A stretch of DNA of 63,336 bases, filler included, from Malacoraja senta (taxonomy: Eukaryota), in assembly GCA_038087875.1 (NCBI GenBank). It is 3 parts of 3 records of this genome, joined end to end, with 100 filler letters (N's around TTAATTAATTAA, not from the genome) between each part and the next. Parts side by side here need not be neighbours in the genome. Positions count along the whole stretch, not along the records: positions 29,254 to 60,924 come from JAXLNO010000763.1; 2 more parts are not named here. One strand, written 5' to 3'. The notes beneath the pieces are model-generated. The model saw only the letters and a program-made list of their open reading frames with translations. It had not been told where the DNA came from and searched no databases. Below are positions 30,145 to 60,924 of this stretch, piece after piece. Each line of letters opens with the position of its first letter. The first letter of the stretch is position 1. A program made the translations under genes and the position numbers.

Positions 30145-32022
<1,878 letters not shown>

Positions 32023-32119
32023 CTCTAAAGCTTAAAACTAAAGGGGCTAATAAAGGCCACAAAGTGGCTTTAGTGAGTCGGATTACAGAAAATCCCACAT
32101 CTTTTTCAAGGTTTCATGG

Positions 32120-32800
32120 TTAGTTTATTGTCACATATACCAATTAAGGTACATTGAAATGCAGACTACCATACACCATACTAAAAAAAGCAACAAGACA
32201 CACAATAACATAAAAGTTAACATAAACATCCACAACAGAGGAGCCCGCACGTTCCTCACTGTGATGGAAGGCAATAAAGTCCAATCTCCTTCCTCTTTAT
32301 CTCCTGCGGTCGGGGCAGTCAAACAATCTGCAGTCGGTGGTCGAAACCCCCATTGGGGAATCGAAACTCCCGCATCGGAGCGGTCGAAACTCCTGCGGCT
32401 TGGAGGTCCCGGATGTCGGTCTCGACCGAGGACCGCGGGCTCCGCGATGTTAAAGTCTTGCAGGCTCTCACAATTGGAGCCCTAAAGTCGATCCCCGACA
32501 GGGATTGCGAGCTCCATGATGGTAAGTCCACAGGCTCCTGCAATGGATCTCCTGGTCGATCTCTAGCAAAGGCCGCCATTCCTCAATGTTAGGCCGCATT
32601 GTGGACGGAGATACGATACAGAAAATATCGCATCAACGTCGAGGTAAGAGATTAGGAAAAGTTTCCCACAACTCCCCCACCCCCCCCCCCCCCACCAAAA
32701 CAAGCTAAAGAACACTAAAGAATATACATTTAACACGTACAAAACGGACACAAAGAAGGAAGGGACAGACATACTGTTGGCGAGGCAACCATTGCAGCAA
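32120..32800 (-). mobile_element. Non-autonomous retroelement (GC-rich body, Rex1-like GTGACAATAAA tail)
   Basis: Minus-strand 3' end ...ATATGTGACAATAAACTAACC and motif GCGGCCTAACAT shared with 55341-56197. Confidence 0.55.
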
Positions 32801-34455: not shown

Positions 34456-34731
34456 ATTATCACTACGTTCAAGGACAGTTTGGTTGTGAGGTGGACGATC
34501 ACAGTCCCACTGTAGGGATATTGAAGTTGGCTTTTGATGGAAGATATGCATTTAGTTTTGATAAGGACAAGCTAAAGTGGACGGTGCATGGTCCAATAGC
34601 TGAGCCCTTCAAAGAGAAATGGGACAAGAATGAAAAAATAAACCGTTATTTCAAGAGCTTGTTAGAACATGACTGTGTGGATCTATGGCTTACATACTAT
34701 GCAATTGGAAAGACATACCTGACCAGAAAAG
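34456..34731 (+). CDS. MHC class I-like gene, plus copy: alpha2 domain exon
   Basis: Polypyrimidine-CAG acceptor, G|GTGAGT donor, phase 1-1, 276 nt (same length as the HLA alpha2 exon). (D)YHYVQGQFGCEV...LAFDGRYAFSFDKDKLKW...FKEKWD...LLEHDCVDLWLTYYAIGKTYLTRK, with cysteines 63 aa apart as in C101-C164. Confidence 0.92.
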
Positions 34732-41884: not shown

Positions 41885-42151
41885 TTTCCCCTGAGGTCAC
41901 TCTCGCTGCCCGACCTGATGATCATTCAGTCCTGTACTGCACTGTGTTTGGATTTTACCCACCGGCCCTCAAAGTCAGCTGGTTGCAGAATGGTCAACAT
42001 GTCTCTGAGACGAAATCTTCTGGGGTCGTACCCAACAACGATGGAACATATCATCTAAGGTCTGTCCTTGAGTATGATCCGTATGATGGGAAACAGTATT
42101 CCTGTCATGTCGATCACAGCAGCCTGCCTGGTGGGAAGATCATCATCTGGG
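41885..42151 (+). CDS. MHC class I-like gene, plus copy: alpha3 (Ig C1-set) exon
   Basis: Acceptor CCTTGTAG, donor G|GTAAG, 267 nt, in phase with alpha2. (V)SPEVTLAARPDDHSVLYCTVFGFYPPALKVSW...VVPNNDGTY...YSCHVDHSSL has the C1 cysteines, FYP, the core W and the class I-type PNxDGT loop. Confidence 0.93.
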
Positions 42152-42226
42152 GTAAGAACATTAAATATTCATTCATAGATAATCATTATCTTCTGTTGTT
42201 TCCATTTTAATCATTGTGACTACATC

Positions 42227-45889: not shown

Positions 45890-45999
45890 AAGGAAATAGG
45901 AAGAAAGACAGGCACATAGGCCTTATTGCCGTGTGTGTGTGCTGATATTGCTGGCTATTGTCTTGGCAGTAATTGTTTGGTGGAGAAAAAAGAGGAGAG
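45890..45999 (+). CDS. MHC class I-like gene, plus copy: TM exon, frameshifted (stop TGA 45943-45945)
   Basis: Same splice sites as the minus copy but 110 nt instead of 105. Reads (E)GNRKKDRHIGLIAVCVC*, and the hydrophobic helix is out of frame. Confidence 0.85.
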
Positions 46000-49376: not shown

Positions 49377-52300
49377 CTTTCTTTTACAATTTTTTTATTG
49401 TTTTTTTTCCAAAAAACAAAAACAAAAATAAAACATAAAAAACAGAGCAAAAAGAATAATGATAAACATAACAATGGTATTGATACATAGGGATCAGGAT
49501 TAAACACATTAATAACAGGTATAAACTAATATGAGACCAGTGTCAAAATACACAATGAATTTAGACCTCTCGGTCTCTATGTAAATATAGTTAAATCTTT
49601 AAAAGGAAACATAAATGTAAAAAAAAGGAAAGATAAAAAGACAAAAAGGAAAAGAAAAAACAAAACCCCCCTAAACTAAAAAAAAGGTTTTAAAAATTGA
49701 TAATAATAAAATAAGAATAAAAATAAAATAAATAAATAAAACAAACAAAACAGAGCAAAACCGAATCTGAACTGAGAAATTCAACAATTTAAGTCTGTTT
49801 GTCGTCAAGTCCGTTCCACCCTATGAAGGTAAAATAATTTTTATAACGGTTAAAGAGGGATCAATTTATGTTGTATGAAAGTGTTCACTAAATTTTCCCC
49901 AAGTCTTATCAAATTTAACCAAGGGTTCAACAATGTCACCTGATTTTTTCTAAATTTAAACATGATATCGTTTCAGAATACCACTGGAGTGTGGTCGGAG
50001 GGTTGGAATCTTTCCATTTAAAGAAAATAAATCTTCTGGCAATTTATGTGGTAAAAGCAATCAACCGATGGGCGGAGTGGGACAAATGAATAGAATCTAA
50101 CATTGGTAACCCAAAAATTGCAGTAATAGGATGAGGTTGTAAATCTATACCTAAGACTACCGAAATAGTATCAACAATTTCTTTCCAATATTTTTCCAAA
50201 AGAGGACAGGACCAAAACATATGGGTCAGTGATGCCACTTCAGAGTTACATCTGTCGCAGGTAGGATTTATATGACGAGAAAAACGAGCTAACTTATCTT
50301 TTGACATATGAGCTCTGTGGACCACCTCAAATTGTATCAAAGCGTGTCTTGCACACATTGAAGAGGTATTAACTAATTGAAGGATCCTCTCCCATTTCTC
50401 TATAAAGAAATTTGGAGTTCTCATTCCCAGTCATTCTTAATTTTATCAAATGTATCTATTTGTAATTTTAAAATCAACTCATGAATAGTCGTTATTAATC
50501 CTTTCTGATAAGGGTTCAACTGTAAAAAAAAATCCAAAATTTCGGGTTGATGTGGTAGCGGAAAAAGGAGTAGTTCCTTTTGTCTAATTTGTAAATATCA
50601 AAAAAAATGTGAAGTAGGTAAGTTATATTTATTGGAGAGTTCGAAAGACATAAAACAACCCTCCAAAATCAAATCACGAAAAGCTACTAATCCCTTCCTC
50701 TTCCATAACAAAAAAACTTGATCAGTACTAGATGGTTGGAAGAGAAATTAGGATAAAATCAGATAGTCCAAAAAACTTACGAAATTGAAACCGTATTCGG
50801 AACGTATGTCTTATTATTGGGTTAGTCATATATTTATTCAATCTCATAATTGTAAAAGGTAACGAGGTCCCTAGAATAGAAGCCAATTATAGCCCTTGTA
50901 AGGAATCACGTTCTAGGTTTATCCATCCAGGGCATTAGGTATCTTCTAAATCTTTTGTCCAAAATGTTAAATAACGAACATTGACTGCCCAATAGTAGAG
51001 TCTAAGGTTCGGCAATGCCAAACCACCAACTTTTTTTGATTTCTGTAGGTATTTTTTACCTAGTCTGGGATTTTTATTCTGCCATATATATGAAGAAATT
51101 TTAGAGTCTATAATATCAAAGAAAGATTTGGAAATAAAAATTGGTATCGTCTGAAATATATACAGAAATTTAGGTAAAATGAACATTTTAATAGCATTGA
51201 TTCGGCCAATTAAGGATAAGGACTTTGGTGACCATTTAATAATAATAATAATAGATTTTATTTATACAGCGCTTTTCAGGACTCAAAGTCGCTTTGCATT
51301 GAGAGTCAGGAATAAACAAAACAAAATAGAGCAGTAAGACAGAGATGCAAAGGGGAGGGGAACATGGGACTAAGGGTATGCAGAGATGAAGAGATGGGTC
51401 TTGAGGCGGGACTGGAAGATGATGAGGGACTCAGAATTTCGGACCAGTTGTGGGAGGGAATTCCAGAGCCTGGGAGCTGCCCTGGAGAAGGCTCTGCTTC
51501 CAAAAGTGCAGAGGTTTGATTTCGGAGTGGAGAGATGACCAGCTGATGTGGATCTGAGGGACCGTGAGGGTTGGTAGGGGGAGAGGAGGTCAGTGAGATA
51601 AGGGGGGGCCAAGTTGTTGAGGGCTTTGTAGATGAGGACCAGGATTTTGTAGATGATCCGGTGGGAAATGGGAAGCCAGTGAAGTTCTTTGAGAACTGGG
51701 GTGATGTGGTGCCAGGATTTGGTGTGGGTAATGAGTCGAGCGGCTGCATTCTGGACCAGTTGGAGTCGGTTGATGCTGCTGGAATTGATTCCAAAGAGAA
51801 GTGAGTTACAGTAGTCCAGTCGGGAGGAGATGAAGGCATGGATGAGTCTTTCAGCAGCGGGGGGTGTGAGAGAGGATCTGCTTTTGGCAATGTTGCGGAG
51901 GTGAAAAAATGATGTTTTGACAACATGGCGGATGTGAGGCTCAAGGGAGAGGGTTGAGTCAAAGATCACGCCAAGGTTGCGGGCCTGAGGAGATGGGGAG
52001 ACAATGGTGCCATCAATAATGAGAGTGGGGTTGTTAATTTTAGTATGTGTTGATTTGGAGCCAATGAGGAGAAATTCTGTTTTGTTACAGGATGTTATGG
52101 TTGATGGTATCGAAGGCTGCACTCAGGTCGAGGATGAGGATATTGAGGGAGCCAGTGTCAGCAGAGGTAAGGAGGTCATTGAGGACTTTCAGGAGAGCAG
52201 TTTCTGTGCTATGGAGGGGACAAAAGCCAGATTGGAGGGGTTCGAATAGGTTATACGCGAGGAGGTGGGAATGAAGTTGTGACGCGACGATACGCTCCAG

Positions 52301-55300
52301 GGTTTTTGAAAGATAGGGGAGGTTTGAGATAGGGCGTTAGTTAATGAGAGAGGAGGGATCAAGACCAGGTTTCTTTAAGATTGGTGTGACAGCAGCAGTT
52401 TTGAAAGCAGAGGGGACAATTCCTTGGGACAATGAGGAGTTGAAAAGATTTGTGAGGTAGGGGCAGAGAGCAGGGAGGCAGGACTTCAGCAGGGGAGTGG
52501 GGAGAGGGTTAAGGGAGCAGGCAGTGGGTTTGGAAGAGCTGATGAGTTTGGAGATTTCAGTAGGGGTGACCGGGTCAAACTGGAAGAGGAAGCAGTGAAC
52601 CGATTTAGTGAACTGATGTTTAATATGGTCAATTAAAGGAATAAAATTAGCTTTAAATAAATCCTTGTGTTTCTTGGTGATCTTAATACCTAAATAAGTA
52701 AAACTTTCGGTAGTCCATCTAAATGGAAACTGTCCATAACTCGAAACAAAATTATTTAATGGGGAGGCTCACCCGTACTAAGATTTAGTTTATAACCAGA
52801 AAAACTACTGAATTGATTAAGTAATGCTACTATTGCCGGAATAGATTTCTCAGGGTTAGAAATAAATAATAACAGATCATCTGCATCAAGAGATATCTTA
52901 TGTGTCTTATTCCCGCGGACAATACCAAAAATATTAGGGGATTCCCTAATAGCAGTGGCTAAAGTTTCCAAAGCAATATCAAATAGTAAAGGACTTAAGG
53001 GACCTTGAAAGAGCCTGAAAAAAAGGGGATCTCTGATTATTAGTAAATACAGAAGCCTGAGGTATAAGATATAGCAGTTTGATCCAAGAGATACATTTTG
53101 GACCAATCTTAACTTTTTCAAGTATATTGAATAAGTATTCCATTCTACTCTATCAATAGCCTTCTCGGCATCAAGTGAGATGACACATTCTGGGGTTTTA
53201 TTAGACGCTGTATATACAATATTTATTAATCTCCTAACATTAAAGAATGAGTAACGATTTTTAATAAAACCTGTCTGATCTTCAGAGATAATTTGCGGTA
53301 AAATCTTTTCCAATCTCATAGGTAATATTTTGGAAAGAATTTTAAAATCTACATTTAACATTGATATAGGTCTATATGATGTCACTTCAGTAGGGTGTTT
53401 ATCTTTTTTTTAAATTAAAGAAATAAAAGCTTCATAAAAAGATTGTGGTAATCTATTCCTTAAAAAGGCTTCTTTAAATACCTTGCATAGCCATTGAGAC
53501 AATAAATTTGAGAAATACTTTAAAAATTCTACTGTTAACCCATCTAAACCGGGAGCTTTACCAGAATTCATTGAAAAAATTGCTTTCTGTATTTCTTCTT
53601 CCGTGATGGGTTCATCTAACAACAGAGACTCATTGTATGGTAAATTTGGTAAGTTCAGTTTCTTTAAAAACTCATGCATTATATTGGAATCAGTAGGAAA
53701 ATCTGATTGGTATAGGGAGGTATAAAATTCCTGAAAGGATTTATTAATTTCGTCATGGTCTACAGTTACTGTACCATCCCGTTTACTCACTTTAGTAATC
53801 TGACGCTTGGCCAACACTGCTTCAATTGATTAGCAAGTAATTTACCAGATTTTTAGCCATTTATATAAAATTTACTTTTGGTTTTAAGCAACTGGTTCTC
53901 AATCGGTGATACTAATAACAAATCATATCTCAATTGAAGTTCAACTCTATTCTTATAGAGCTCTAAACTAGGAGCTTTTGAATATTTTTTATCAATTTCT
54001 TTAATCTCGTCAGCCAATGTGCGTATTCCTTTTTGTGTTTGTTTTTTTAATCCCGCGGAGTATGAAATAATTTGTCCACGAATATATGCCTTAAAAGCAT
54101 CCCAAACTATACCATTGGATATCTCTTCATTAGAGTTTGTCAAGAAGTAAAAAGCAATCTGATCTTTCATAAACTTAATAAAGTTTGAGTCTTGAAGCAA
54201 AGTAGCATTAAATCGCCATTGTTTAGCACTAAACTTGGAATCAGGTAGTTTGATCAATAGTTTCACTGGTGCATGATCAGAAATAGCAATTGTATCATAC
54301 TCACATGCAATGACCGATGGAACTAGCCGAGAATCTAGTATAAAATAGTCGATCCTAGAATAACTATGAAATACATGAGAGAAAAATGAAAATTCTTTGT
54401 CATTTGCGTGTAAGAATCTCCAAATTTCTAACATTCCCGAGTCAAGTAAAAAAGAATTAATAAAATTAGCTGATATATTTGGAAGCACATGATCAATCGA
54501 GGGATTCAAACAGCAATTGAAGTCTCCATCCATTATTAAAAAGTGTTCATTTAAATTAGGAAAGGATGCAATTAACTGTTTAAAAAACTCAGGGTGATCA
54601 ATATTTGGTGCATAGACATTCACCAAAGCCACTTTTTGCCTAAAAAGGACAGCGGTAATCACCAAGAATCTGCCATATGGATCAGAAATTGTTTCATGGT
54701 AAACAAACGGAATTGAGGAGTCAATAAAAATAGAGACTACCTTTCACCTTAGCCTGTAAATTTGAATGAAACTGCTGTCCTCTCCAAAACTTGAAAAATC
54801 GTGACTTGTCATCTTGCCTTACATGAGTTTGCTGAACAAAGATAATCTGAGCATTAAGTCTGTGAAGAACTTTAAAAAAAAATCCTCTTAATGGGATGGT
54901 TCAAGCCATTCACATTCCATGAAAGGATATTAGTAACTTTATCCATATTGCTTGTAAAAATCATGTGGGATGTAATGGGTTAATTTCTTGAAGCCTAAAA
55001 GTTCATAATACTGGATGTAGAAAAATCTAGGGCGGAGCCAGAAGTGATGACATTTCAGCCAACTCTGTAGTTCAGAATTTGCACAAATGGAGTTCACTAA
55101 ATAGGGAACAAAAGACCCCTCCCCCCTCCCACCCCTGTCGAACCCCAAACTGACCAATGGACAGTCAGCAAACTACCTAATCCCCTCCCCGATCCCATCT
55201 CTCCCAGTAACAGCGCTCAGCATAAAAAGAATAATATTTAACCACTACGTCATAACACATTCGTTATTATCTCTTTGAGAGAGAAGGAAAAAAAATACAG

Positions 55301-56199: not shown

Positions 56200-56715
56200 A
56201 AAAAGTTTCAGAAGTGATCAATCTGGCTGTAAAATTTTAAAATCGCCCATGGTTCTGAAGTGGGTTTGTACATGCAAAAAGGAAATGCTTCTGAAGCTAA
56301 ATTTATCATTAAAGAAATCTCCAGACTTACGAGTGATGTGTAGAAAAGTTTTCTATCATTATGCTATTGAGATGTATATTTTGGCAATAATAAAATGTCC
56401 TGACAGCTTAAACACCCACTGTCCTTCAATAGGATATTGTCAATTTGCTGAGGTTGATTATGTCCAATTAACAGCTAACAATTATGCCATTCCTTGGCTT
56501 GCATCTGAGTAAAATGTAATTTGGGTGATCACAGAGGAAGAGGACTTAACCTTTTGATGCCGTGGACAGTGGAACATTTTGATTCTGTTGTGGGGGAAGT
56601 TCATGTTGAATTCTATAATGTGTTGTGTCATTAATTCTTTTATGTAAAGCACTTTGGTTTCAACGCGAGTTGATTTAAACATGCTATATAAATAAAATGT
56701 ACTTACTTACTTACG
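56200..56715. mobile_element. L1-like ORF2 fragment (minus, ~56200-56510) and L2-like 3' end (plus, ~56520-56715)
   Basis: The L2 3' end reads AAAGCACTTTG...GCTATATAAATAAAA followed by (TACT)n. The L1 assignment is weaker. Confidence 0.5.
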
Positions 56716-56856
56716 TATGGTTTGTGATTTTTTTACCCACACCCACCCAAAACCACCCTCACCCACTCGAAACCACCCTCACCAACCACACCCACCGGAA
56801 ACCACCCACACCCACCCGAAACCACCCTCACCCACCCGAAAGCACCCTCACCCACG

Positions 56857-57975
56857 CTTACAGGGTCTTGGTGAGACCACACCTGGAGTATTGCGTACAG
56901 TTTTTGTCTCCTAATCTGAGGAAAGACATTCTTGCCATAGAGGGAGTACAGAGAAGGTTCACCAGACTGATTCCTGGGATGTCAGAACTTTCATATGAAG
57001 AAAGACTGGATAGACTCGGCTTGTACTCGCTGGAATTTAGAAGATTGAGGGGGGATCTTATAAAAACTTACAAAATTCTTCAGGGGTTGGACAGGCTAGA
57101 TGCAGGAAGATTGAACCCGATGTTGGGGAAGTCCAGAACAAGGGGTCACAGTTTAAGGATAAGCGGGAAGTCTTTTAGGACCGAGATGAGAAAAACATTT
57201 TTTTTTCACACAGAGAGTGGTGAATCTGTGGAATTCTCTGCCACAGAAGGTAGTTGAGGCCAGTTCATTGGCTATATTTAAGAGGGAGTTAGATGTGGCC
57301 CTTGTGGCTAAAGGGATCAGGGGATATGGAGAGAAGGCAGGTACAGGATACTGAGTTGGATGATCAGCCATCTTCTTCTGTCGTGTGTCTTTTAGACCTG
57401 CAGCTCTGTTGAGGCGAGCCAGGCCAATGTATCATCGTCCAGGTCAATCAGACCTCGTTCACCGTTCGGTGGCCGATGTGTGCTCCACTGTCTGTGTTGG
57501 GTCCCCACACTCGCAGGAGGCACTCGCTGTCCACGAGGCCCCCACCTCTTCATCACTACTCCATAGCGTCCTCAAGCGGTTGAGGGTTGACCACTGCTTT
57601 CGGGGCAGGTCCTGGCCAGGGACGTCCATGGGGTCATCGATGTAATGGTGTAGCCTAGATGTTTCCGCTGACTTCAACTGGTCTCTCCATCTCGTCTTGA
57701 CCATCTGGTCAAAGACAGCCTCTACGCGGCCTCCTCTACGAGTAGCTTACAGGATCATAAGCCCAACCGCTAAAAGCCATGCCTCCCCAGGCCAGGCGGC
57801 ACCGTTAAATGCCGCCAACTGTCGAGGTTTAGCGCTACTGCAGCTCAATGTTGAAGGCCTTACCACCGCCAAGCTCAACGTCATCGAACAGATGATCAGC
57901 CATGATCACATTGAATGACGGTGCTGGCTCGAAGGGCCGAATGGCCTACTCCTGCACCAATTGTCTATGTTTCTA
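56857..57975 (+). mobile_element. Young 5'-truncated CR1 carrying a nested insertion
   Basis: Near-identical to 24521-25323, with a CTATGTTTCTATG tail. Confidence 0.9.
57372..57890 (-). mobile_element. Vingi/Ingi-like LINE fragment with 5' inversion
   Basis: 13-bp TSD GATGATCAGCCAT (57359-57371, 57891-57903). Minus strand: WSTLNRLRT...CECGDPTQTVEH plus an AAG tail. Plus strand: LLQLNVEGLTTAKLNVIEQ, an APE endonuclease N-terminus. The clade assignment is from motif recall. Confidence 0.65.
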
Positions 57976-58294
57976 TGAAACCGCCCTCACCAGAAACCAC
58001 TAACAAAACCACCCTCACCCACCCACACCCACCCACCCTCAACCACCCACACACCCTCAACCACCCTCAACCACCCACACACCCAAAACCACCCTCAACC
58101 CCCCACACACCCTCAACCACCCTCACCCACCCTCAACCACCCACACACCCGAAACCACCCTCACCCACCCGAAACCACCCTCACCCACCCGAAACCACCA
58201 TCACCCACCCGAAACCACCCTCACCCACCCGAAACCACCCTCACCCACCCGAAACTACCCTCACCCACCCGAAACCACCCTCACCCACCCGCAC

Positions 58295-58930
58295 AAAGCT
58301 CCAACCGCCAACCGCCGACCTACCTGCCTTCACCAAGATGGCCGCCGGCTGCCGACCTCACCTGCCCTCACCAAGATGGCCGCCGAATGCAGACCTCACC
58401 AAGATGTTCTCTATCACTCTATGACTAAGTGACTGCAACATTTTACCTTCAGTGTGAAGCAGCATCATCACATTCGCCGCCATTTTGTGTCGGCCTTCAC
58501 ATTTGAAAACAAACCGCCATCGAGCCACTGCCAGCTGAAGCCACGCCCTCGGATCGCCGGTGACGTCACGGCGCAGGGAGGGCGGACGTCACGGCGCAGG
58601 GCGGGCGGGGAGGGCGAACGTCACGGCGCAGTGCGGGAGGGGAGGGCGGGTCATCTTCATCTTGTTCACGCTCCACGTCTCCAACCGCCAACCCCGCCCC
58701 CGCCCGCGACCTCACCTGCCCTCACCAAGATGGCCGCCCGCCCGCCGGTCCCGCCCCCCCCCCCGCCCCCGAGGCCGAGTCTCTACGTCAACCGCATGAA
58801 AATGGCGGCGCGCGGAGAAGCGGCAGTTGGTGACGTCGCTGCCGACGGACTTGAGGTAAATAAATAAATAACTGATGATCAGCGGCTGCAGCGGATTGTG
58901 CGGGATCGGGTCACGTGGGGGAGAAGTGAG
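58295..58930 (+). promoter_or_regulatory. CpG-island-like promoter candidate
   Basis: Very CpG-rich. YY1-like CAAGATGGCCGCC x3, AAAATGGCGGCG (58799-58810) and CGCCATTTTG. CRE TGACGTCA at 58561 with GACGTCAC repeats, plus GC boxes. Confidence 0.6.
58802..58855 (+). CDS. Candidate first coding exon of an unidentified gene (MAARGEAAVGDVAADGLE)
   Basis: AAAATGGCGGCG start context within the CpG island, ending at a GAG|GTAAAT donor (phase 0). No downstream exon was recognised. Confidence 0.4.
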
Positions 58931-60339: not shown

Positions 60340-60924
60340 GCATAGAAACCATAGAAAATAGGTGCAGGATGAGGCCATTCGGCCCTTCGAGCCAGCACCG
60401 CCATTCATTGTGATCATGGCTGATCATCCCCAATCAATAACCCGTGCCTGCCTTCTCCACATGTCCCTTGATACGACTAGCCCCCTAGAGCTCTATCTAA
60501 CTCTCTCTTAAATCCATCCAGTGATTTGGCCTCCACTGCCCTCTGTGTCAGGGAATTCCATAAATTCACAACTCTCTGGGTGAAAACTTTTTTTCTCACC
60601 TCAGTCTTAAATGACCTCCCCTTTATTCTAAGACTGTGGCCCCTGGTTCTGGACTCGCCCAACATTGGGAACATTTTTCCTGCATCTAGCTTGTCGAGTC
60701 ATTTTATAATTTTATATGTTTCCATAAGATGCCCCCTCATCCTTCTAAACTCCAGTGAATACAAGCCTAGTCTTTTCAATCTTTCCTCATATGACAGTCC
60801 CGCCATCCCAGGGATCAATCTCGTGAACCTACGCTGCACTGCCTGAATCACAAGGATGTCCTTCCTCAAATTAGGAGACCAAAACTGTATACAATACTCC
60901 AGATGTGGTTTCACCAGAGCCCTA
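60340..60924 (-). mobile_element. CR1 3' part, running into the gap
   Basis: KPHLEYCIQFWSPNLRKD...RGHLMETYKI, TRGHSL and the CR1 3' UTR with a CTATG tail. Confidence 0.9.

What the first reader, a model, noticed from the sequence alone, without database searches (positions are those of the whole stretch)
45890..45999. Membrane-bound versus possibly secreted pair: the TM exon is intact in one copy and frameshifted in the other
Seen: the minus copy reads ATT TTG TGT GTG CTG (full helix, then RKKRR). The plus copy reads ATT GCC GTG TGT GTG TGC TGA, a net +5 nt in a GT microsatellite, ending the protein at ...RHIGLIAVCVC* before the helix. The alpha2 and alpha3 exons and all splice sites of this copy remain intact. 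Inference: the pair could encode one membrane-bound and one soluble class I-like molecule (compare Qa-10 and soluble HLA-G), with two free C-terminal cysteines that could form disulfide dimers. The stop lies 54 nt upstream of the donor, at the edge of the 50-55-nt NMD rule, and escapes NMD if this exon is terminal. The GT run could also act as a slippage switch that varies between individuals.
Basis: partly seen in the sequence, partly recalled or inferred. Interest (0 to 1): 0.75.

Follow-up and report, generated by a model that had tools for sequence, protein, structure and literature searches.

The report
Frameshifted anchor exon, skate MHC-I-like gene
One copy of a skate immune (MHC class I-like) gene has one extra GT in a short GT run, which cuts the protein off just before its membrane anchor; this looks more like a recently broken copy or a sequencing slip than an evolved secreted form, and no reads could be checked.

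Summary
The sequence reading is correct. Window 45890-45999 is the connecting-peptide/transmembrane (TM) exon of a skate nonclassical MHC class I gene. Its alpha2 exon (34456-34731) and alpha3 exon (41885-42151) are open, with canonical splice sites. In frame, the TM exon reads EGNRKKDRHIGLIAVCVC, then TGA at 45943-45945, 54 nt before the donor.

The lesion is one extra GT unit. The window has (GT)5 at 45931-45940. Amblyraja radiata and two Rhinoraja longicauda paralogs have (GT)4, and all 15 homologous proteins that include this exon read ...IGLI[AV]VCVLI... The shift is therefore +2.

The rest of the exon matches the other sequences exactly: 0 window-only substitutions, against 28 in 1100 flanking intron positions. 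The change is therefore recent, or an assembly slip.

The family is multicopy (at least 10 genes in R. longicauda), so dying copies are expected. No read or RNA evidence could be obtained. The leader and alpha1 exons and the last exon lie outside the piece.

- Young pseudogene or null allele: about 0.55.
- Assembly error: about 0.22.
- Q10-like secreted form: about 0.1.
- Rescue by splicing: about 0.06.

A "slippage switch" is implausible for a 5-unit repeat. Interest is low.

The parts
34456..34731 (+). alpha2 exon (276 nt, phase 1 in and out) of a skate nonclassical MHC class I gene; open frame, both domain cysteines present
   Evidence: PF00129, E 3e-12; PDB 9ch4_A, E 4e-34
41885..42151 (+). 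alpha3 exon (267 nt, C1-set Ig domain); open frame, both cysteines present
   Evidence: PF07654, E 2e-19; 9ch4_A, E 1e-32
42152..42210 (+). Frame that stays open if the alpha3 donor is not used (GKNIKYSFIDNHYLLLFPF, then stop). NCBI models in two other skates end in the same way
   Evidence: P0157; P0180
45890..45999 (+). Connecting-peptide/TM exon, 110 nt instead of the family's 108 nt
45931..45940 (+). (GT)5 tract; homologues have (GT)4. The extra unit causes the +2 frameshift
45943..45945 (+). Premature TGA, 54 nt upstream of the exon's last base
45933..45998 (+). Residual TM helix plus stop-transfer coding (VCVLILLAIVLAVIVWWRKKRR), now out of frame; no window-specific substitutions
49380..54700 (-). 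Non-LTR retrotransposon (RVT_1, zf-RVT), with a nested element, in the intron after the TM exon. Colinearity with the other skates' genes ends at its edge. Its upper (5') end at 54700 is approximate, judged from the last ORF.

Best explanation
The window holds three exons (alpha2, alpha3, TM) of one copy of a multicopy nonclassical MHC class I family of skates. This is the elasmobranch lineage whose solved representative is PDB 9CH4.

Replication slippage added one GT unit to a (GT)4 tract that is conserved in every other member seen. The tract encodes the start of the TM helix (..A-V-C-V-L..). The +2 shift gives ...RHIGLIAVCVC-stop and removes the helix, the RKKRR stop-transfer signal and the cytoplasmic tail.

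The most likely status is a recent loss-of-function lesion: a young pseudogene or a null allele in a birth-and-death gene family.

If the gene is transcribed and spliced normally, the mRNA carries a stop 54 nt before the last exon junction. That makes it a borderline NMD target. Any product would be an anchorless heavy chain with a 9-residue hydrophobic tail.

Shown: the lesion, its uniqueness to this copy, its youth, and the multicopy family. Inferred: loss of function.
For: - Exon reading and stop.
- Class I identity.
- Colinearity with the A. radiata gene, including introns at 87-94% identity.
- (GT)5 against (GT)4 in three homologous exons.
- Intact ..IGLI[AV]VCVLI.. in the 15 homologous proteins that include this exon, from A. 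radiata, L. erinacea (including transcript-derived Logan proteins) and R. longicauda.
- At least 10 paralogs on one R. longicauda chromosome.
- 0 window-unique substitutions in 108 exon columns against 28 in 1100 intron columns (expected about 2.7, Poisson P about 0.06).
- Window-unique short indels occur at about 2.4 per kb in the adjacent intron, no more than in A. radiata. An indel at the most slippage-prone site of an unconstrained exon is therefore unremarkable.
- Window-branch changes in alpha2 plus alpha3 are 8 nonsynonymous to 4 synonymous. That is 2.2% of sites, close to the intron rate of 2.5%, and is compatible with weak constraint.
Against: - No other disabling lesion is visible. 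Alpha2 and alpha3 are open, the cysteines are kept and the splice sites are canonical.
- The dN/dS signal does not differ from that of intact R. longicauda paralogs.
- No reads were examined, so the extra GT could be an assembly artefact or heterozygous.
- Expression is unknown.
- Precedent exists for exactly this kind of lesion giving a functional secreted molecule (mouse Q10; PMC2483932).
Confidence: 0.55

Rival explanations
1. Assembly or consensus error. The true sequence is (GT)4 and the gene is an ordinary membrane-bound copy. The extra GT would have arisen from read or polishing error in a dinucleotide run, on a short repeat-bounded contig.
For: - The piece is only 31.7 kb, is one of several 'short pieces', and begins and ends in transposon sequence.
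- The exon is otherwise identical to the family's inferred ancestral state, as expected if nothing really happened to it.
- The best-holding runs carry only about half of the sampled words of the region, which suggests low depth per run.
Against: - Window-unique short indels in 3.3 kb of adjacent intron (8) are no more frequent than in the A. radiata assembly (7). There is no sign of a generally indel-prone contig.
- Alpha2 and alpha3 (543 nt) show no frame errors.
- A 5-unit dinucleotide run is not a typical hard case for modern assemblers.
Confidence: 0.22
2. Functional secreted class Ib molecule of the mouse Q10 type. The frameshift is fixed. The mRNA escapes NMD because the stop lies at or within the 50-55-nt limit, or because the transcript ends early. 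The anchorless heavy chain is secreted with beta2-microglobulin, possibly as a disulfide-linked dimer through the terminal Cys-Val-Cys.
For: - The lesion type and position match Q10, where a frameshift in the TM exon gives a stop in the same exon (PMC2483932).
- The ectodomain exons and splice sites are intact.
- The stop is 54 nt from the junction.
Against: - The lesion is unique to this copy among all homologues.
- There is no sign of age: nothing has changed downstream of the stop, so there is no evidence of time spent under selection as a soluble form.
- No transcript or protein fragment from this species was found.
- The hydrophobic tail GLIAVCVC, with unpaired cysteines, is as likely to cause ER retention as secretion (inference).
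Confidence: 0.1
3. Rescue at the RNA level, by one of two routes.
- Use of the AG at 45902-45903 as acceptor. This removes 14 nt, restores the frame and gives E-RQAHRPYCRVCVLILLAIVLAVIVWWRKKRR, a membrane-bound product.
- Skipping of the whole TM exon. Alpha3 would then join the last exon in phase, giving a soluble product.
For: - Direct reading of the sequence shows that removing the first 14 nt gives an exon of 96 nt, a multiple of 3, and reopens the helix frame.
- Both alpha3 and the last exon of homologues are phase 1, so skipping keeps the frame.
Against: - The alternative AG is preceded by purines (cagAAGGAAATAGGAAG) and lies downstream of a strong acceptor with a long pyrimidine tract.
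- The resulting connecting peptide is not conserved in any homologue.
- There is no RNA evidence.
Confidence: 0.06

Closest known systems
Intact paralogs and orthologs of the same skate MHC-Ib family (A. radiata XP_032898133.1; L. erinacea XP_055521885.1; R. longicauda XP_078272153.1 and nine more)
   Same: - Same exon structure and phases.
- 89-93% protein identity in alpha2 and alpha3.
- TM exon 96-98% identical in DNA.
- Introns colinear.
   Different: All of them have (GT)4 and an open TM exon of 108 nt. The window copy has (GT)5, 110 nt and a stop.
Mouse H2-Q10, a secreted liver class Ib molecule
   Same: A frameshifting indel inside the TM exon, with the premature stop in that same exon, leaves an anchorless heavy chain (PMC2483932).
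   Different: - Q10 has a 13-bp deletion, and it is expressed in liver and secreted.
- Here the lesion is a 2-bp insertion seen in one copy of one assembly, with no evidence of expression or fixation.
Soluble HLA-G made by alternative transcripts that lack the TM and cytoplasmic parts
   Same: A nonclassical class I molecule made soluble by loss of the TM and cytoplasmic parts (PMC2483932). From my own knowledge, isoforms G5 and G6 retain intron 4. The window's alpha3 donor read-through frame, and two NCBI skate models, would be the analogous route.
   Different: HLA-G uses regulated alternative RNA processing of an intact gene. The finding here is a genomic frameshift.
Qa-2 (GPI-anchored class Ib) and the marine iguana Amcr-UA (class I without TM or cytoplasmic regions)
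   Same: Class I molecules that lack a conventional TM anchor (PMC2483932).
   Different: - Qa-2 carries a GPI signal. The window's tail has only 8-9 hydrophobic residues, too few for a typical GPI signal (inference).
- Amcr-UA lacks TM coding sequence altogether. Here it is fully present, one frame off.
PDB 9CH4 chain A ('Ig-like domain-containing protein'), the closest solved structure
   Same: About two-thirds identical residues in the aligned alpha2 and alpha3 (counted from the printed alignments), with E 4e-34 and 1e-32. The full A. radiata homologue matches at E 9e-118.
   Different: It is an ectodomain construct from another elasmobranch. I could not establish its lineage name (UDA, UEA, UFA or UGA) from the papers held.

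Membership tests
MHC class I heavy chain (class I-like fold) | alpha2 half of the groove domain matches the MHC_I profile | tested here: met
   PF00129, 46.9 bits against a cut-off of 28.3; hundreds of class I chains.
MHC class I heavy chain (class I-like fold) | Membrane-proximal C1-set Ig domain (alpha3) | tested here: met
   PF07654, 70.1 bits against a cut-off of 21..
MHC class I heavy chain (class I-like fold) | Intradomain disulfide cysteines in alpha2 and alpha3; phase-1 exons of about 270-276 nt | tested here: met
   FGCEV...HDCVD and LYCTV...YSCHV; exons of 276 and 267 nt, phase 1.
MHC class I heavy chain (class I-like fold) | Leader and alpha1 domain present | not testable with these tools
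   upstream homology reaches only the last ~500 nt of the alpha1-alpha2 intron before the piece ends. Homologues have 4-26 kb introns here.
MHC class I heavy chain (class I-like fold) | In-frame TM anchor and cytoplasmic tail | tested here: not met
   stop before the helix; the last exon is not in the piece.
Skate multicopy MHC-Ib lineage (9CH4-like) | Closest relatives, and locus colinearity with annotated members | tested here: met
Secreted class Ib molecules of the Q10 type | Frameshift in the TM exon with a stop in the same exon | tested here: met
Secreted class Ib molecules of the Q10 type | Truncated form conserved or fixed (found in relatives or other copies) | tested here: not met
   every other member is in frame. 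Population data are not available.
Secreted class Ib molecules of the Q10 type | Stable transcript and secreted protein | not testable with these tools
No protein fragments of this species were found.
Young pseudogene or null allele in a birth-and-death family | Disabling lesion in an otherwise conserved coding exon | tested here: met
Young pseudogene or null allele in a birth-and-death family | Relaxed constraint or further lesions | tested here: inconclusive
   8 nonsynonymous to 4 synonymous changes on the window branch, similar to intact paralogs; no decay downstream of the stop, but little power (1.4 changes expected in 54 nt).

The most novel reading that the evidence does not exclude
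A skate nonclassical MHC class I paralog was converted into a secreted, possibly disulfide-dimerising molecule by a one-unit microsatellite expansion in its TM exon. This would be an independent, cartilaginous-fish parallel of mouse H2-Q10, paired with a membrane-bound sister copy.
Probability: 0.1. Interest if true: 0.45.

Novelty: new member of a known kind. Interest (0 to 1): 0.2.

Why it matters
If the lesion is real and merely inactivating, it is a routine example of gene death in an expanded MHC-Ib family. It is useful mainly for annotation: flag this copy as frameshifted and do not count it as an intact membrane class I gene.

If the truncated form proved to be expressed and fixed, it would show that soluble class Ib molecules arise by the same simple route in the oldest jawed vertebrates as in mice. 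That would be of moderate interest to comparative immunologists.

The work also shows that this 9CH4-like lineage is strongly expanded in skates: at least 10 genes on one Rhinoraja longicauda chromosome, against one to three hits per shark or sawfish species in the same search.

Tried and rejected
- **Raw reads.** There is therefore no read or RNA-seq evidence.
- **Protein fragments from this species.** A search with the alpha3 exon found no candidate. A search with the full A. radiata protein found only named proteins of other species.
- **Literature.** A search for '9CH4' gave only false hits. The two Almeida et al. J Immunol papers were not held. The supplement of PMC10751288 does not list the skate accessions. 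The lineage name is therefore unresolved.
- **Alpha1 deleted, making the copy a gene fragment?** Rejected. The 691-nt match to a region upstream of alpha1 in R. longicauda is an inserted repeat. True colinearity covers only the end of the alpha1-alpha2 intron, and the exon is simply beyond the piece.
- **NCBI 'anchorless' models as precedent for soluble forms?** Rejected as evidence.
  - The L. erinacea model P0157 ends because its contig ends about 3 kb before where the TM exon should be.
  - The R. longicauda gene behind P0180 has a perfectly intact TM exon.
- **Indel-prone contig?** No excess of window-specific short indels compared with A. radiata.
- **Other acceptors.** An upstream alternative acceptor does not restore the frame. 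The only AG inside the exon that does is discussed under the rival explanations.
- **Short ORFs across the GT tract** are too short to have been gene-called, so no exact-match look-up was attempted.

Full report
**What is in the window**

The usable piece (29254-60924) has no gaps. On the + strand it carries three exons of an MHC class I-like gene.
- An alpha2 exon at 34456-34731 (276 nt).
- An alpha3 exon at 41885-42151 (267 nt).
- The exon of the finding at 45890-45999 (110 nt).

All three have AG acceptors and GT donors and join in phase 1. Alpha2 matches Pfam MHC_I (46.9 bits) and alpha3 matches C1-set (70.1 bits). The best solved relative of both is PDB 9CH4 chain A (E 4e-34 and 1e-32, about two-thirds identical residues in the printed alignments). 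It is far ahead of classical class I chains, including nurse shark 6LUP.

**Which gene family**

An exhaustive HMMER search with alpha2 found three close representatives. Their clusters hold annotated 'class I histocompatibility antigen, F10 alpha chain-like' proteins of the skates Leucoraja erinacea, Amblyraja radiata and Rhinoraja longicauda. They also hold transcript-derived Logan proteins.

R. longicauda has at least 10 such genes on one chromosome. In the same search, sharks and a sawfish gave one to three hits per species.

The window is colinear, introns included, with the A. radiata gene at 87-94% identity, and similarly with L. erinacea. Those two species are 95-97% identical to each other in the colinear blocks. 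The window therefore comes from another skate or from a diverged paralog.

Published work describes several elasmobranch nonclassical lineages: UBA and UEA multicopy; UDA, UFA and UGA single or low copy (PMC10751288, PMC12562908). I could not establish which name applies here.

**The observation**

Entering from alpha3 in phase 1, the exon reads E-GNRKKDRHIGLIAVCVC and then TGA at 45943-45945. The stop ends 54 nt before the last exon base. One frame over, 45933-45998 still encodes VCVLILLAIVLAVIVWWRKKRR.

The comparison copy ('minus copy') is not in my piece, so the '+5' cannot be checked.

Independent comparison gives a cleaner answer. In DNA alignments with the same exon of A. radiata (L001) and of two R. 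longicauda paralogs (L003, L004), the only indel is a 2-nt gap in all three, opposite one GT of the window. The window has (GT)5 at 45931-45940 against (GT)4 elsewhere. The 15 homologous proteins that include this exon all read ...RHIGLI[AV]VCVLI[SL]LAI.... The family exon is 108 nt. The window's is 110 nt, a +2 shift.

**How old is the lesion**

I made a four-way alignment of the exon plus 600 nt on each side. The window has 28 unique substitutions in 1100 ungapped intron columns and none in the 108 exon columns. The expected number at the intron rate is about 2.7, so the Poisson P is about 0.06.

The exon is 95-98% identical to the others, while its flanking introns are 83-92% identical. So the exon was conserved along essentially the whole branch leading to this copy. 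The extra GT is then either very recent or not real. For the 54 nt after the stop alone there is no power (1.4 changes expected).

**Other signs of decay**

On the window branch, alpha2 plus alpha3 carry 8 nonsynonymous and 4 synonymous unique changes. That is 2.2% of sites, about the intron rate. Intact R. longicauda paralogs show similar ratios, so this is inconclusive. No cysteine or splice site is lost.

Upstream, true colinearity covers only the last ~500 nt of the alpha1-alpha2 intron, broken up by inserted repeats. The piece ends before alpha1 would be reached. An apparent alpha1 deletion was therefore rejected.

Downstream, colinearity with all three other genes stops at 49379. A minus-strand LINE begins there (RVT_1 and zf-RVT domains). 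The rest of the piece is repeat sequence. The short last exon (DYQNIPPNQNVPC in A. radiata) is not found. It may lie beyond the piece, or it may be lost.

**Artefact or real**

I could not look at reads.

Indirectly, window-specific short indels in 3.3 kb of adjacent intron (8) are no more frequent than in the A. radiata assembly (7). So the contig is not obviously indel-prone.

Against that, the piece is short, repeat-bounded and apparently unplaced. An otherwise untouched exon is also exactly what an assembly slip would look like. I put the artefact at about 0.22.

**Mechanism and alternatives**

The most economical reading is slippage at the only repeat in the exon, producing a null copy or allele in a family that evolves by duplication and loss (about 0.55).

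If the copy is transcribed, the stop sits at the 50-55-nt NMD boundary relative to the TM/cytoplasmic junction. Homologues have a single coding exon after this one. The product would lack any anchor, because a 9-residue hydrophobic end cannot span a membrane.

A functional secreted form has a precise precedent in mouse Q10, where a 13-bp deletion in the TM exon causes a frameshift and a stop in the same exon (PMC2483932). Here nothing indicates fixation, age or expression (about 0.1).

Two RNA-level rescues are formally possible.
- The AG at 45902-45903 would restore the frame, but it lacks a pyrimidine tract and follows a strong acceptor.
- Skipping the exon would keep the phase.

Together I put these at about 0.06.

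The 'slippage switch' idea is unlikely on general grounds. Dinucleotide runs of 4-5 units mutate at near-background rates, and the tract length is invariant across three species and many paralogs.

**Annotated anchorless models in relatives**

Two NCBI models end by reading through the alpha3 donor (P0157 and P0180). Neither supports a soluble isoform.
- P0157's contig ends before the TM exon.
- P0180's gene has an intact TM exon.

The window has the equivalent open read-through frame at 42152-42210. I record it only as a lead.

**Verdict**

The functional interpretation is unsupported. The finding is most likely an ordinary young pseudogene or null allele, or else an assembly slip. Interest is low, and reads across 45925-45950 would settle the question.

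Noticed in passing
window 42152-42210 (+); compare P0157 and P0180: If the alpha3 donor is not used, the frame stays open for 19 codons (GKNIKYSFIDNHYLLLFPF, then stop). NCBI models in L. erinacea (GKNVKYSFIDNHYLLLFPF) and R. longicauda (GKDVKNYFIDRRS) end the same way. This would be an HLA-G5-like intron-retention route to a soluble form, independent of the frameshift. The two models are otherwise explained by a contig end and by a gene with an intact TM exon, and no RNA was examined.
   Followed up: partly
window 49380-54700 (-), nested piece about 51300-52250: A non-LTR retrotransposon (RVT_1, E 2e-21; zf-RVT) with several long ORFs sits exactly where colinearity with the A. radiata and R. 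longicauda genes stops. That point is about 1.2 kb before their last exon. Homology does not resume before the piece ends, so the last exon of this copy is displaced by more than 11 kb or lost.
   Followed up: partly
window 32105-32795 (+): A 691-nt element is inserted in the alpha1-alpha2 intron. In both R. longicauda paralogs it occurs as two tandem copies upstream of alpha1 (L004 23234-23943 and 23968-24648). It first looked like evidence for an alpha1 deletion, but it is a repeat.
   Followed up: yes
window 30145-31898 (+): A run of ORFs (up to 187 aa) in one orientation looks like a decayed DNA-transposon gene. It has no Pfam match at E 1e-3, so it is unclassified.
   Followed up: partly
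window 56697-58424 (+): Long ORFs are made of tandem Pro/Thr/His-rich units (…THPKPPSPTRNHPHPPETTL…), adjacent to a repeat found many times in the skate loci (56859-57371, with an inverted copy at 60341-60924). This is probably a repeat-internal minisatellite.
   Followed up: no
L. erinacea proteins P0152, P0153, P0155, P0169; not in the window: NCBI isoforms fuse the L. erinacea member of this MHC-Ib family to a downstream GPR139-like receptor. The result is a 574-663 aa 'uncharacterized protein LOC129716032'. It looks like a read-through annotation artefact, and it also polluted the 90% protein cluster with GPCR sequences.
   Followed up: no
R. longicauda chromosome CM130181.1: At least 10 near-identical members of this lineage lie on one chromosome, two of them about 12 Mb apart (26.4 and 38.3 Mb). 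Sharks gave one or a few hits in the same search. This suggests a skate-specific expansion.
   Followed up: partly
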